A stretch of 29,198 nt of DNA from Octopus sinensis (lineage: Eukaryota): contig NW_021833178.1 of the NCBI RefSeq assembly GCF_006345805.1, forward strand, positions 1 through 29,198. The letters run 5' to 3'. Every line of letters begins with the position of its first letter. Within the stretch, counting starts at the first letter, position 1. A model generated the notes under the pieces. It was not told where the DNA came from. It saw only the letters and a program-made list of their open reading frames with translations, and made no database searches. The position numbers and the translations under genes are program-made. Shown here piece by piece: positions 1,794 through 5,097 of this stretch.

Positions 1794-2201
1794 TAAGTTA
1801 AGATCATTATGCAATTGTTTATTTATATTTCTTATAAATACACTTATTGCACTTTTGTTTAACTGATTCTTTTTACTTCTCTCTCTCTTATTATCTATCT
1901 TCTCTCTCTCTTCCTCCTCACTTTCTCCTTCTTTCTCTCTCTCTCTCTATATATGCTTATGTATATACATGTATATATATATATATATATAAAACTCTAT
2001 TCTTTTTTTTATATATATATATTTTTTATTTTTTTTATTTATATATTTTTTTTATTTATTCTTTTATCTAATTTAACACTGACTCCTTGACCACTCCCTC
2101 AAGTATGATATTTTGCGCTATGCCTACCCCCAAAAAGTCCCCCACCACCACCCCTTTAAACCTGCCTAAATGTATAAATGCCAATACAATTCTTGTTAAC
2201 T

Positions 2202-2252
2202 AGCTTCCTGAAGATTTCTCTTGAATGAAACAGTTCTAGTCCTGTAGAAGCT
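2202..2252 (+). ncRNA. Type I hammerhead ribozyme-like motif, predicted cleavage after A2246
   Basis: AGCTTC (2202-2207) pairs with GAAGCT (2247-2252) as stem I. Core CTGAAGA 2208-2214. Stem II TTC/GAA with TCTT loop, closed by a non-canonical U.U. GAAA 2227-2230. Stem III ACAG/CTGT with an 8-nt loop. GUA triplet 2244-2246. Confidence 0.75.
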
Positions 2253-2296
2253 CCTTCTATATAATAAATATATATATATATATAAATATATATATA

Positions 2297-2660
2297 TAAA
2301 TTATAAGAGAGTTACTACTATGTGGATAGCTGTAGTGCTAAAAATAGCCTCGTTACTAGTAATAGCCACAGAAAGATGTTTCCAAGAAGAAATAACATTA
2401 CATTTAACGGAAGGAAAGTGAAATATAACGAAAAAATAGATTGACCCTGAACAATAGTTTCATTACTAATGTAATATGTAATTTTACTTACATAGACATC
2501 TATAAATCATCGGTCAATCTATTTTTTCGTTATGTTTCACTTTCCTTCCGTTAAATGTATTGTTATTTCTTCTTGGAAACATCTTTCTGTGGCTATACTA
2601 GTAACGGAGCTATTTTTAGCACTAGAGCTATCCACATAGTGGTAACTCACTTATAATTTA
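2297..2660. repeat. Long inverted repeat (foldback/MITE-like): ~150-bp arms, 65-bp spacer
   Basis: Left arm 2297-2446 equals the reverse complement of 2512-2660 with about 8 differences (manual alignment). Confidence 0.95.
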
Positions 2661-2733
2661 TGTATAAATTTGTATTATCTCCCTAGTTTTATGTGCTAAG
2701 CTACTTGGTGTTAAATTGATGATATTATTAAAT

Positions 2734-2943
2734 TAATATCAAATTTTTCACCCTCATTTATGAATTTATAAATTTAATGATACTGCAGTAAATATTTCAT
2801 GCAGTATTCGTTTCCAATGAGTTTTAGCATGCTTTTGGCGGGGAATTTGAGGCATTACTACAAATGCAATCGATTAAACCGCACGTGTATTTGACGCTCG
2901 CGAGGGTCTAATAATATCAAATTTTTCACCCTCATTTATGAAT
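2734..2943. repeat. Exact 32-bp direct repeat pair
   Basis: TAATATCAAATTTTTCACCCTCATTTATGAAT at 2734-2765 and 2912-2943. Confidence 0.9.
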
Positions 2944-3644: not shown

Positions 3645-4194
3645 AATATCCCCCTACAAAGATGTCCTCAGGCAAGCAGGAATAACAAGCATGTTTGCAC
3701 TCCTCACGCAAAGACGTATGAGATGGCTTGGGCATGTTAGCCGTATAAAAGATGGCAGAATCCCCAAGGACATACTCTACGGAGAGCTTGCTAGGGGTAC
3801 TAGGTATGTGGGTAGCCGCTCTTACGTTACAAGGATGTTTGCAAAAGGGACATGAAGGCCTGCAACATCAATATTAGCGGTTGGGAGGCAGTTGCCGGCA
3901 ACCGTGGAGACTGGCGACGTACCGTAAGAGAGGGAATACAAAGGAGTGACAGAGAGAGAGAGAGGAGAAATGGAAAGACAAGAAAAGACGTCAACAAGAA
4001 ACTATGGCATTACAACCAGCCAGGAACAGTCTTCGCTACATTTGCGGTACCTGCCAGAGGGAGTGTTTGTCCAGGATAGGACTACACAGCCACAGCAGGA
4101 AATGTATCAGGACATGAAATGTAAAAGCCGGACTAGACTACTTTATGCGCAACTCCATTGTCCCCGAGACAAAAAGGATGCCAACCAACCAACC
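3645..4194 (+). mobile_element. RTE-clade LINE, 5'-truncated 3' fragment with frameshifts
   Basis: Translates to YKDVLRQAG...RRMRWLGHVSRIKDGRIPKDILYGEL...RYKDVCKRDMKACNI...WRRTVREG, then YICGTCQRECLSRIGLHSHSRKC (RTE C-terminal Cys/His motif). Ends in a (CAAC)n tail. Confidence 0.9.
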
Positions 4195-4569: not shown

Positions 4570-5097
4570 ATATATATATATATATATATACATATATACA
4601 CATTATGTATGTATATATTAGTGTACAGTGAAGCTGATATTTATGATACATGTCTAGGTATTGCTTGTAAAAGACAAAATTTGTCGTAAATGTGTGTGAG
4701 TGTATATGAGTGTGTGTGAGTGTTTATGTGTGTGCGTGTGTGTGTGATTATGCGTGTATGTGTAAGCTTGTGTGTGTTTGTAATTGAATAGACATATGAA
4801 AAACTTGTGCGTGTAAACATGTGTAGGTGTTTGAGGCCACGTATTTCTGTTGGCAATTTCAGTTTGGCAATAATTTTATTTTCGGTGCAAAACGTTTAAT
4901 ATCTCGAGGGCAAACATCAATGATTAAGATCAGTAGGGGCTTACAGTTTGCAGTGCTCAAAACCCTCACGAAATGTGAGATGTTTCTATAGCAACTAGTG
5001 CTGGAAAGCGATTTAAATAATTCTCAGCTATTTGGAATCTCTTGTTACGTTTTTAAGAAACATTCTGGAATTGTGGAAAGAAAAATCTACAACTGAT

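What the first reader, a model, noticed from the sequence alone, without database searches (positions are those of the whole stretch)
2193..2268. Near-canonical type I hammerhead ribozyme hidden in apparently junk DNA
Seen: AGCUUC-CUGAAGA-U-UUC(UCUU)GAA-U-GAAA-CAG(UUCUAGUC)CUG-UA-GAAGCU. All conserved core nucleotides are present, stems I and III are perfectly paired, and the triplet is a permissive NUH (GUA). A distal helix UUGUUA/UAAUAA (2193-2198 with 2262-2267) would create an internal loop in stem I suitable for tertiary contact with loop II. Established: type I hammerheads occur in Penelope-like element pLTRs and retrozymes of invertebrates. The one deviation is U.U instead of G-C at 10.1-11.1; the TGAAA could be a CpG-decayed CGAAA, so activity may be reduced. 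No feature or ORF track explains this structure.
Basis: partly seen in the sequence, partly recalled or inferred. Interest (0 to 1): 0.85.

Follow-up and report, generated by a model that had tools for sequence, protein, structure and literature searches.

The report
Hammerhead ribozyme of a Penelope-like retroelement
The motif is real: it is the hammerhead self-cleaving RNA motif at the 3' end of a very abundant Penelope-like retrotransposon, here in a short truncated copy, so it is a further example of a known association and not a hidden novelty.

Summary
All hammerhead core bases are present, stem I has 6 bp, stem II has 3 bp closed by a U.U, stem III has 4 bp, and the cleavage triplet is GUA.

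It is not in junk DNA. Window ~1989-2269 is a 5'-truncated 3'-terminal fragment of a retroelement inserted in a (TA)n microsatellite. The core plus stem II occurs 2,794 times in this 2.72-Gb genome.

Longer copies carry, 3.1-3.8 kb upstream on the same strand, an RT/GIY-YIG ORF. Its motifs are the ones published as diagnostic for the Hydra clade of Penelope-like elements (PLEs).

Rfam's hammerhead models do not detect the motif, although they score a canonical PLE hammerhead of the same genome at 48 bits. Related PLEs (about 40% protein identity) do carry a type I hammerhead at the same place before the (TA)n, with the same U10.1/U11.1 and different, compensating stems. A covariance model built only from such relatives hits 2202-2252 at 22 bits (E 7e-4).

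The proposed distal helix is not supported.

Self-cleavage is untested. Stem II is weak and competing folds are predicted. Verdict: a new member of a known kind.

The parts
1989..2269 (+). 5'-truncated, tail-less 3'-terminal fragment of a Hydra-clade Penelope-like element (PLE). The 5' boundary is fuzzy because it lies in T/A-rich low-complexity sequence.
   Evidence: 98-99% identical over 2060-2257 to at least 40 other places in the genome. BLAST of flanks shows homology starting at 1990-2036 and ending at 2269-2305. The alignment of 20 copies is. The same 210 nt lie 3.1-3.8 kb downstream of the RT/GIY-YIG ORF on the same strand in 5 copies.
2202..2207 (+). Hammerhead stem I, 5' strand (AGCUUC)
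   Evidence: Pairs perfectly with 2247-2252. Stem I covaries among relatives.
2208..2214 (+). Core C3-A9 (CUGAAGA)
2215..2226 (+). Stem-loop II: U10.1, UUC, loop UCUU, GAA, U11.1 (a U.U mismatch closing a 3-bp helix)
   Evidence: The same U10.1/U11.1 with other, compensating helices occurs in relatives.
2227..2229 (+). Core G12 A13 A14
2230..2245 (+). Stem-loop III: A15.1-CAG, loop UUCUAGUC, CUG-U16.1
2246..2246 (+). H17 (A). The predicted cleavage is between 2246 and 2247.
   Evidence: Follows from the hammerhead numbering applied. Cleavage itself is not tested.
2247..2252 (+). Stem I, 3' strand (GAAGCU)
   Evidence: It also forms a competing 8-bp hairpin with 2254-2261 in the predicted minimum-energy fold.
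2263..2268 (+). AATAAA just before the element's short 3' end (2269)
   Evidence: Canonical PLE hammerheads of the same genome are likewise followed by AATAAA.
2270..2298 (.). (TA)n microsatellite abutting the 3' end, the preferred insertion target of this PLE clade
   Evidence: Preference of Hydra-clade PLEs for (TA)n is reported in PMC8557442.

Best explanation
Window 2202-2252 (+) is the hammerhead ribozyme motif (type I topology, open at stem I) of a Hydra-clade Penelope-like retroelement. The window holds only the last ~280 bp of that element (about 1989-2269): a 5'-truncated, 'tail-less' insertion into a (TA)n microsatellite.

The motif belongs to a hammerhead subtype in which stem II is closed by a U10.1.U11.1 mismatch instead of G-C. 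Hammerheads of related PLEs share this trait.

Inferred mechanism. In sense transcripts of full-length or tandem/inverted copies, the three helices bring the core together. The RNA cuts itself after A2246 (GUA|G). That leaves a 2',3'-cyclic phosphate on the upstream piece and a 5'-OH on the 23-nt-plus-tail piece. This is as proposed for PLE hammerheads that process multimeric pLTR transcripts.

Shown: the motif, its host element, its positional homology, and compensating changes in stems I and II among relatives.

Inferred: that it folds and cleaves. Stem II is weak, so activity is probably low or dependent on context. This truncated copy has no promoter or ORF of its own, so here it is most likely an inert relic unless transcribed by read-through.
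For: Motif and uniqueness in the window.

Host element:
- The 26-nt core plus stem II occurs 2,794 times against 0 for the control pattern.
- The same 210-nt terminus lies 3.1-3.8 kb downstream of an RT/GIY-YIG ORF, on the same strand.
- The ORF and its homologues show DKT, a CxCX5C linker, GIY-YIG without an internal CCHH, CxxC/CxH and RWK. Copies abut (TA)n. These are the traits published for the Hydra clade (PMC8557442).
- An optional ~80-nt tail sits on one arm, and inverted 5'-truncated partners are common. Both are described for PLEs.

Homologous hammerheads:
- PLEs at about 40% protein identity have a type I hammerhead between the stop codon and the (TA)n. In L056, L058 and L059 it has U10.1/U11.1.
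- CTGANGATCGC..GCGTGAAAC gives 41 hits in this genome against 0 control and at least 120 metagenome contigs.
- A pattern that leaves stem II free gives 133 hits against 0 control, with several different helices.
- Stem I covaries: 89 cells changed on both sides against 31 in shuffles.
- A covariance model built from 33 such hammerheads, none from the candidate's family, hits 2202-2252 end to end at 22.1 bits, E 7e-4. The next best hit in the window scores 9.7 bits.

Literature: a natural U10.1-U11.1 mismatch and 2-bp stems II occur among hammerhead representatives, and U-U supports more cleavage than any other mispair (PMC3088659).
Against: - No Rfam hammerhead family matches even at E<=10 on 59 nt. 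A canonical PLE hammerhead of the same genome scores 48.2 bits.
- Predicted folding does not favour the hammerhead. It scores -7.3 against an MFE of -8.5 kcal/mol for the 51 nt alone. In its 3' context, stem I pairs have about 3% probability, because 2243-2250 pairs with 2254-2261.
- Stem II is only U-A, U-A, C-G.
- In copies that span it, sequence runs on across the cleavage site. So the RNAs that were reverse-transcribed were uncut there.
- In a Poseidon PLE, hammerhead mutants did not affect insertion in vitro (PMC11167929).
- Copies are 98-99% alike, so within-family conservation says nothing about selection.
- The set used for covariation was chosen with a pattern and a filter of 3 bp or more in stem I. 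Only the outer stem I pairs and the between-family stem II changes are independent evidence.
Confidence: 0.85

Rival explanations
1. Relic hammerhead. The motif descends from the PLE hammerhead, but in this family it no longer cleaves at a useful rate. The conserved 3' terminal ~210 nt would matter mainly as the template end recognised by the element's RT/EN, not as a ribozyme.
For: - Stem II is weak and AU-rich with a U.U closure.
- Competing folds sequester core bases and the 3' strand of stem I.
- The family amplified to at least 2,794 copies from RNAs uncut at this site.
- Hammerhead catalysis is dispensable for PLE insertion in vitro, and PLE clades without canonical hammerheads proliferate well (PMC11167929; PMC8557442).
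Against: - All core bases are intact in the master sequence, and the three helices are kept by changes on both sides relative to relatives.
- U.U at 10.1-11.1 and very short stems II are found in natural hammerheads, and U-U is the best-tolerated mispair.
- A decaying motif in a family this young cannot be told from a working one by sequence alone.
Confidence: 0.3
2. Chance resemblance. An AT-rich repeat happens to contain CUGANGA, GAAA and UH with short complementary stretches.
For: - About 21 such relaxed matches are expected per genome of this size.
- No Rfam hit.
- The fold z-score is -1.14.
Against: - The motif sits in sense orientation in the last ~70 nt of a PLE, where relatives have a hammerhead.
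- It matches a model trained on other elements at E 7e-4 over its full length.
- U10.1/U11.1, GAAAC and N7=A are shared with other PLE hammerheads of this genome.
Confidence: 0.03
3. The stretch serves chiefly as a structured or palindromic element for retrotransposition. The stem I 5' strand lies in the palindrome GAAGCTTC at the junction of head-to-head dimers. It could act as a stop, a template-jump point or a microhomology point when both DNA strands prime cDNA synthesis.
For: - 12 close (-,+) pairs occur among the first 100 motif hits.
- Eight were read and all join within or next to stem I's 5' strand. In each of the eight, one arm shows tail sequence and the other abuts (TA)n.
- A PLE protein cleaves and extends both strands in vitro.
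Against: - This does not explain the intact catalytic core or the conserved U.U/GAAAC features.
- A 4-8-nt palindrome may give the junction by microhomology with no role for the ribozyme fold.
- No census of all truncation points was made.
Confidence: 0.1

Closest known systems
Hammerhead ribozymes of Penelope-like elements (Cervera & de la Pena 2014, PMC4209133; Hydra clade in Craig et al. 2021, PMC8557442)
   Same: - Type I topology.
- Located in the terminal repeat or 3' region of a PLE, in sense orientation, a few tens of nt from the end.
- High copy number.
- Frequent inverted pairs.
- (TA)n targets.
   Different: - Stem III is a 4-bp helix with an 8-nt loop, not the 1-2-bp palindromic stem of the 'minimal' PLE hammerheads, so no dimer is needed on paper.
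- Stem II is only 3 weak pairs.
- 10.1-11.1 is U.U, whereas Cervera & de la Pena list G10.1-C11.1 as a conserved trait of their set.
- The element has an unusually long (3.1-3.8 kb) TG/TA-rich stretch between ORF and hammerhead, against under 3 kb in total for most described Hydra-clade elements.
Natural hammerheads with a U10.1-U11.1 mismatch and very short stem II (Perreault et al. 2011, PMC3088659)
   Same: The same deviation from the consensus. It is reported as found in nature, and U-U as the most active of the mispaired combinations. Stems II of 2 bp are reported.
   Different: Those examples were described across many sources. Here the trait marks the hammerheads of a PLE lineage: this genome, coral-associated and other metagenome contigs.
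Rfam RF00163 Hammerhead_1 and the canonical PLE hammerheads of this same genome (GUAC-CUGAAGAG-ACCC..GGGU-CGAAAC-AUGUGUC-GUAC)
   Same: CUGAAGA with N7=A, GAAAC, type I topology, AATAAA shortly downstream. The downstream flank is similar in two of six copies (z 4.2 and 5.5).
   Different: Those score 34-48 bits. The candidate scores nothing reportable.
Animal (non-LTR) retrozymes
   Same: Hammerhead-bearing sequence related to PLE termini (bioRxiv 10.64898/2026.07.22.740005).
   Different: Retrozymes are tandem arrays of hammerhead-bearing units. The window has one copy and no tandem unit.

Membership tests
Hammerhead ribozyme, type I | Conserved core C3 U4 G5 A6 N7 G8 A9 ... G12 A13 A14 ... 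A15.1-U16.1, H17 | tested here: met
   CUGAAGA, GAA, A2230-U2245, A2246.
Hammerhead ribozyme, type I | Three helices around the core, with stems II and III closed by loops and stem I open | tested here: met
   stem I 6 bp, stem II 3 bp with a 4-nt loop, stem III 3 bp plus A-U with an 8-nt loop.
Hammerhead ribozyme, type I | G10.1-C11.1 pair at the base of stem II | tested here: not met
   U2215 and U2226. This is a published natural variant and is shared by relatives. So it lowers 'canonical', not 'hammerhead'.
Hammerhead ribozyme, type I | Score at or above the Rfam gathering cut-off (RF00163, 34 bits, or other hammerhead families) | tested here: not met
   No match at gathering or at E<=10 on 151 or 59 nt. 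The positive control scores 48.2 bits. Three relatives with U.U (L056, L058, L059) and L057, whose motif has G10.1-C11.1, also fall below gathering.
Hammerhead ribozyme, type I | Helices supported by compensating changes among homologues | tested here: met
   Stem I: (0 of 500 shuffles reach the observed score, and slid controls are far lower). The inner 3 pairs were pre-selected. Stem II: different helices between families with the U.U kept. A model from relatives hits the candidate at 22.1 bits, E 7e-4.
Hammerhead ribozyme, type I | Site-specific, Mg2+-dependent self-cleavage 3' of H17 | not testable with these tools
   Needs in vitro transcription or mapping of RNA ends.
Hammerhead ribozyme, type I | Loop-loop or bulge tertiary contact between stems I and II (needed for fast cleavage at physiological Mg2+) | tested here: inconclusive
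No conserved contact could be derived.
Hydra-clade Penelope-like element (host of the motif) | Single ORF with RT followed by a C-terminal GIY-YIG endonuclease | tested here: met
   The 652-aa open frame in L047 has YRDDG followed by ..VYTCEV..SYI(G/R)MT..R..H. Recognised by motifs only: Pfam and PDB sequence searches found nothing.
Hydra-clade Penelope-like element (host of the motif) | DKG changed to DKT; RWK motif; CxCX5C linker; no CCHH inside GIY-YIG; CxxC and CxH around the conserved E and N (PMC8557442, section 11) | tested here: met
   SDKTKN, CNCPDKTTC, no Cys between VY and YIG, CCDLC..E, N..C.H. RWK, DKT, C506/C508/C514 and C634/H636 are invariant or nearly so in 20 homologues. The L047 copy itself lacks the RWK part at its N-terminus.
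Hydra-clade Penelope-like element (host of the motif) | Insertion into (TA)n; optional 3' tail on one side; inverted 5'-truncated partner | tested here: met
Hydra-clade Penelope-like element (host of the motif) | Phylogenetic placement of the RT within the Hydra clade | not tested
   No reference PLE sequences were at hand. Placement rests on diagnostic motifs.
Animal non-LTR retrozyme | Tandem array of hammerhead-bearing units | tested here: not met
   One motif in the window and no tandem unit.

The most novel reading that the evidence does not exclude
The 5' edge of this hammerhead (stem I 5' strand, within the palindrome GAAGCTTC) is the preferred junction of very short head-to-head PLE dimers. 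The ribozyme's stem I would double as the point where two cDNAs, primed from the two cleaved DNA strands, stop or anneal. That would tie hammerhead position to the PLE-specific inverted-repeat insertion structure.
Probability: 0.15. Interest if true: 0.55.

Novelty: new member of a known kind. Interest (0 to 1): 0.33.

Why it matters
- It places an unannotated stretch: a truncated Hydra-clade PLE in a (TA)n tract.
- It documents a very abundant PLE family whose hammerhead has U.U at 10.1-11.1 and a 3-bp AU-rich stem II, near the lower limit of what natural hammerheads show.
- It shows a practical blind spot. Rfam's hammerhead models at gathering score miss three U.U hammerheads of related PLEs in other organisms, and the U.U patterns give 41 and 133 exact hits in this genome. 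Censuses of ribozymes in invertebrate genomes would therefore undercount them.
- If the motif cleaves, it is a convenient minimal natural variant for studying the role of the 10.1-11.1 position.
- If it does not, the family shows that a PLE can amplify to thousands of copies with a crippled ribozyme. That bears on the open question of what PLE hammerheads are for.

Tried and rejected
- **SINE on the minus strand.** The extra 80 nt of some copies resemble a tRNA T-arm when reverse-complemented, and the other end is A-rich. Rejected. The copies share a sharp end on the + strand's 3' side, graded truncation on the other side, and an RT/EN ORF upstream on the + strand.
- **Terminal inverted repeat of a DNA transposon or MITE**, because of (-,+) pairs. 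Rejected. The pairs enclose or abut the PLE ORF. They fit the known PLE inverted 5'-truncated partner.
- **3' tail of a LINE.** Rejected once the GIY-YIG domain was seen.
- **Pfam** on the ORF and on homologues gave only noise. A profile of 20 homologues found no PDB chain.
- **cmscan at E<=1 on 40 kb of family loci** returned only spurious mir-297-type matches to TG/TA microsatellites in the 150 rows shown.
- **First DNA search of the genome**, with a query that included the (TA)n run, found nothing, not even itself. A query without it worked.
- **Within-family conservation** is uninformative: the retrieved copies are the best matches and nearly identical.
One diverged copy (EN 70% identical, with stops) still has the terminal 210 nt at 97.6%.
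- **The supplementary hammerhead list of PMC8557442** is not held.

Full report
**1. The observation**

- AGCUUC / GAAGCU (2202-2207 with 2247-2252) is stem I.
- CUGAAGA (2208-2214) is core C3-A9.
- U2215 and U2226 face each other at 10.1 and 11.1.
- UUC/GAA with loop UCUU is stem II.
- GAA (2227-2229) is G12-A14.
- A2230-U2245 plus CAG/CUG with an 8-nt loop is stem III.
- A2246 is H17.

A relaxed type I descriptor of my own finds this and nothing else on either strand of the window.

In 40 Mb of random sequence of the window's composition, a descriptor as loose as the candidate occurs 3.9e-9 times per base. That is 2.3e-4 per window and about 21 per genome of this size. The bare motif is therefore unlikely for one window but not decisive for a scan of many windows.

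**2. Direct tests of the hammerhead reading**

Rfam finds no family in the window at the gathering score. It finds no hammerhead family at E<=10 when only 151 or 59 nt are searched.

The same search scores a canonical hammerhead of the same genome at 48.2 bits. RF00163 has at least 8 hits over its cut-off in the genome. All are of the type GUAC-CUGAAGAG-ACCC..GGGU-CGAAAC-AUGUGUC-GUAC.

Folding does not favour the hammerhead:
- The MFE of 2193-2268 is a different structure, with z -1.14.
- For the 51 nt alone, the hammerhead is -7.3 against -8.5 kcal/mol.
- In its 3' context, stem I pairs have about 3% probability, because 2243-2250 pairs with 2254-2261.

Taken alone, these results argue against a near-canonical ribozyme.

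**3. What the surrounding DNA is**

The window is a whole 29-kb contig of a 2.72-Gb eukaryotic assembly. It is rich in TA and CA microsatellites.

The stretch 2060-2257 is 98-99% identical to at least 40 other places, out of 1,882 first-look candidates. The 26-nt core plus stem II occurs 2,794 times, against 0 for the control pattern.

Copies share a sharp end at ...TATATAATAAAT followed by (TA)n. In 6 of 20 copies there are a further ~80 nt (TAATTTTACTCTGC...GGGACCTACA) and then (TA)n. On the other side the copies are truncated at graded distances.

In five copies the same 210 nt lie 3.1-3.8 kb downstream of, and on the same strand as, an open frame of up to 652 aa. That frame has these features:
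- an RT-like YRDDG;
- a C-terminal GIY-YIG domain;
- DKT instead of DKG;
- a CxCX5C linker (CNCPDKTTC);
- CxxC and CxH around the conserved E and N.

Its 802 database homologues are typically about 700 aa and about 40% identical. They add a nearly invariant RWK.

These are the features by which Craig et al. defined the Hydra clade of Penelope-like elements. So are the insertion into (TA)n, the optional tail on one side and an inverted 5'-truncated partner (PMC8557442). The last two are seen directly.

Pfam and PDB sequence searches did not recognise the ORF. The assignment therefore rests on motifs, not on a tree.

The window's copy (about 1989-2269) is a solo, tail-less, strongly 5'-truncated fragment.

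**4. Is the motif the element's hammerhead?**

No other hammerhead-like motif exists in about 70 kb of family loci, on either strand.

I fetched contigs for seven homologous ORFs from other organisms. None reaches an Rfam hammerhead cut-off. The relaxed descriptor nevertheless finds a type I motif between the stop codon and the (TA)n in four of them, and a decayed one in a fifth:
- L056: AGUUGU-CUGACGA-U-CGCG-AAGA-CGCG-U-GAAAC..GU-A-ACAACU
- L058: ..CUGAUGA-U-CGC..GCG-U-GAAAC..
- L059: ..CUGAAGA-U-CGC-GAAA-GCG-U-GAAAC..
- L057: a G10.1-C11.1 version with a 10-bp stem II

So the U.U is not peculiar to this locus.

Further pattern searches agree:
- CTGANGATCGCN{3,8}GCGTGAAAC has 41 hits in this genome against 0 for the reversed control. 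It also has at least 120 metagenome contigs.
- Of 89 instances read, 53 have a stem I of 3 bp or more and a proper stem III/UH.
- A pattern that leaves stem II free (CTGANGAT..TGAAACTC..GAGT) has 133 hits against 0 control. It shows several unrelated helices inside the U.U, such as CCUGUG/CACAGG, AGC/GCU and UGG/CCA.

Relative to the CGC/GCG form, the candidate's UUC/GAA differs on both sides at two of three pairs and keeps pairing. All six stem I pairs differ while staying complementary.

I aligned 33 such hammerheads, none from the candidate's family. Stem I shows 89 cells changed on both sides against 31 +/- 5 in shuffles, and no slid register comes close. The inner three pairs were pre-selected by my filter. 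The outer pairs at columns 2-60 and 3-59 were not, and they pair in 28 and 26 of 33 sequences.

A covariance model built from that alignment hits window 2202-2252 over its full length at 22.1 bits, E 7e-4. The next best hit in 29 kb scores 9.7 bits. This score is conservative, because stem II was invariant in the training set.

The flank after the hammerhead also has relatives. It reads AATAAA, then ..TTTTACTCTGC..ATGTATTGAGTACC.. in tail-bearing copies. Similar sequence occurs in the canonical-hammerhead family of this genome (z 4.2 and 5.5 in two of six comparisons). It also occurs in coral-associated contigs (..GCTCTGCATGTATTTGCATCGAGCACTC..) and in old copies in this genome (..GTATTGAGCACTCC..). 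I read this resemblance by eye and did not test it further.

**5.

CpG decay. Of the family's copies, 2,794 have T at 11.1 and none has C. Only two have a non-T at 10.1. The master sequence therefore had U.U, as its relatives do.

Published work already notes that natural hammerheads can start stem II with a U10.1-U11.1 mismatch. It also notes that this mispair supports more cleavage than any other, and that stem II is often only 2 bp (PMC3088659).

By contrast, Cervera and de la Pena list G10.1-C11.1 as conserved in their PLE set (PMC4209133). So this lineage differs from the PLE hammerheads they described.

The distal helix has no support.

**6. How it most likely works**

Established for PLEs:
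- Hammerheads sit in the terminal repeats.
- They are thought to process multimeric transcripts.
- Their in vitro activity is often low.
- In one Poseidon element, reverse transcription starts at two internal sites that bracket the optional tail. Both DNA strands are cut and extended, and hammerhead mutants insert normally (PMC11167929).

Applied here by inference:
- Sense transcripts that run through a copy can fold the three helices and cut after A2246.
- The two 3' ends seen in the genome (short, and with tail) both lie downstream of that site.
- A cut RNA would lack both ends, so the RNAs that gave rise to the genomic copies were uncut at this site.

Cleavage is thus at most partial, or serves another step. 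Examples are trimming read-through or tandem transcripts, or producing unit-length RNA.

The window's copy has no ORF or promoter of its own and is probably inert.

**7. Verdict**

The interpretation as a PLE-type hammerhead is supported in substance and corrected in detail.

Activity is untested. I put about 0.85 on 'hammerhead motif of a Hydra-clade PLE' and roughly even odds on measurable self-cleavage.

This is a new member of a known kind. Two side results may be useful. Rfam's models at gathering score miss the U.U hammerheads examined (none of the relatives' loci reached the cut-off). And very short head-to-head dimers join at the hammerhead's 5' edge.

Noticed in passing
L205-L212 (own genome, e.g. 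G000:C1:7124700-7124945): Very short head-to-head dimers of the element's last ~65-150 nt. The two arms join at or next to the palindrome GAAGCTTC, which is the hammerhead's stem I 5' strand. In each of the eight read, one arm shows tail sequence and the other abuts (TA)n. Twelve such pairs occur among the first 100 motif hits on contig C1.
   Followed up: partly
L047, L033, L049, L050, L051 (own genome): This PLE family has 3.1-3.8 kb of degenerate TG/TA microsatellite-like sequence, with a few unique islands, between the stop codon and the hammerhead. Described Hydra-clade elements are mostly under 3 kb in all.
   Followed up: partly
L056, L058, L059 and the 41 and 133 pattern hits in G000: In L056, L058 and L059, hammerheads with U10.1/U11.1 fall below the gathering score of every Rfam hammerhead family, although they have a full core and paired stems. 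The 41 and 133 pattern hits in G000 show how common this form is; they were not themselves run against Rfam.
   Followed up: partly
L061, L070, L074, L077, L095, L137, L138; L200-L204: The same CUGANGA-U-CGC..GCG-U-GAAAC core with long (4-7 bp) stems III occurs on metagenome contigs that do not look like PLEs. The pattern with stem II left free also matches five IMG/VR viral contigs (L200-L204), which were not inspected. The U.U form may therefore not be confined to animal retroelements.
   Followed up: no
L006/L007 (G000:C16:25146363 and 25146794): Two canonical RF00163 hammerheads lie 431 bp apart on the same strand, which suggests a tandem, retrozyme-like unit. There is a weak GIY-YIG-like match nearby.
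   Followed up: no
window 2282-2675: Long foldback: arms 2282-2446 and 2512-2675 are 89-98% complementary around a 65-nt centre, directly after the (TA)n that follows the PLE fragment. It is MITE-like or hairpin-like and its family is unknown.
   Followed up: no
window 2734-2770 and 2912-2948: A 37-nt direct repeat (97% identical), 178 nt apart start to start. The second copy runs into a TA/CA microsatellite.
   Followed up: no
window 3658-3810: The frame reads KDVLRQAGITSMFALLTQRRMRWLGHVSRIKDGRIPKDILYGELARG. From memory this resembles the C-terminal part of a non-LTR (LINE) reverse-transcriptase ORF, so it may be a remnant with stops further on. It was not searched.
   Followed up: no
L059 about 4740-4800: In the 3' UTR of a related PLE, the hammerhead position reads ..AATCGCTGACATATATATATGAAACTCAGAGTTACAGA... 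The 3' half of the motif is intact, but the 5' half and stem II are replaced by a TA run. An intact copy lies elsewhere on the contig (6531-6572).
   Followed up: no
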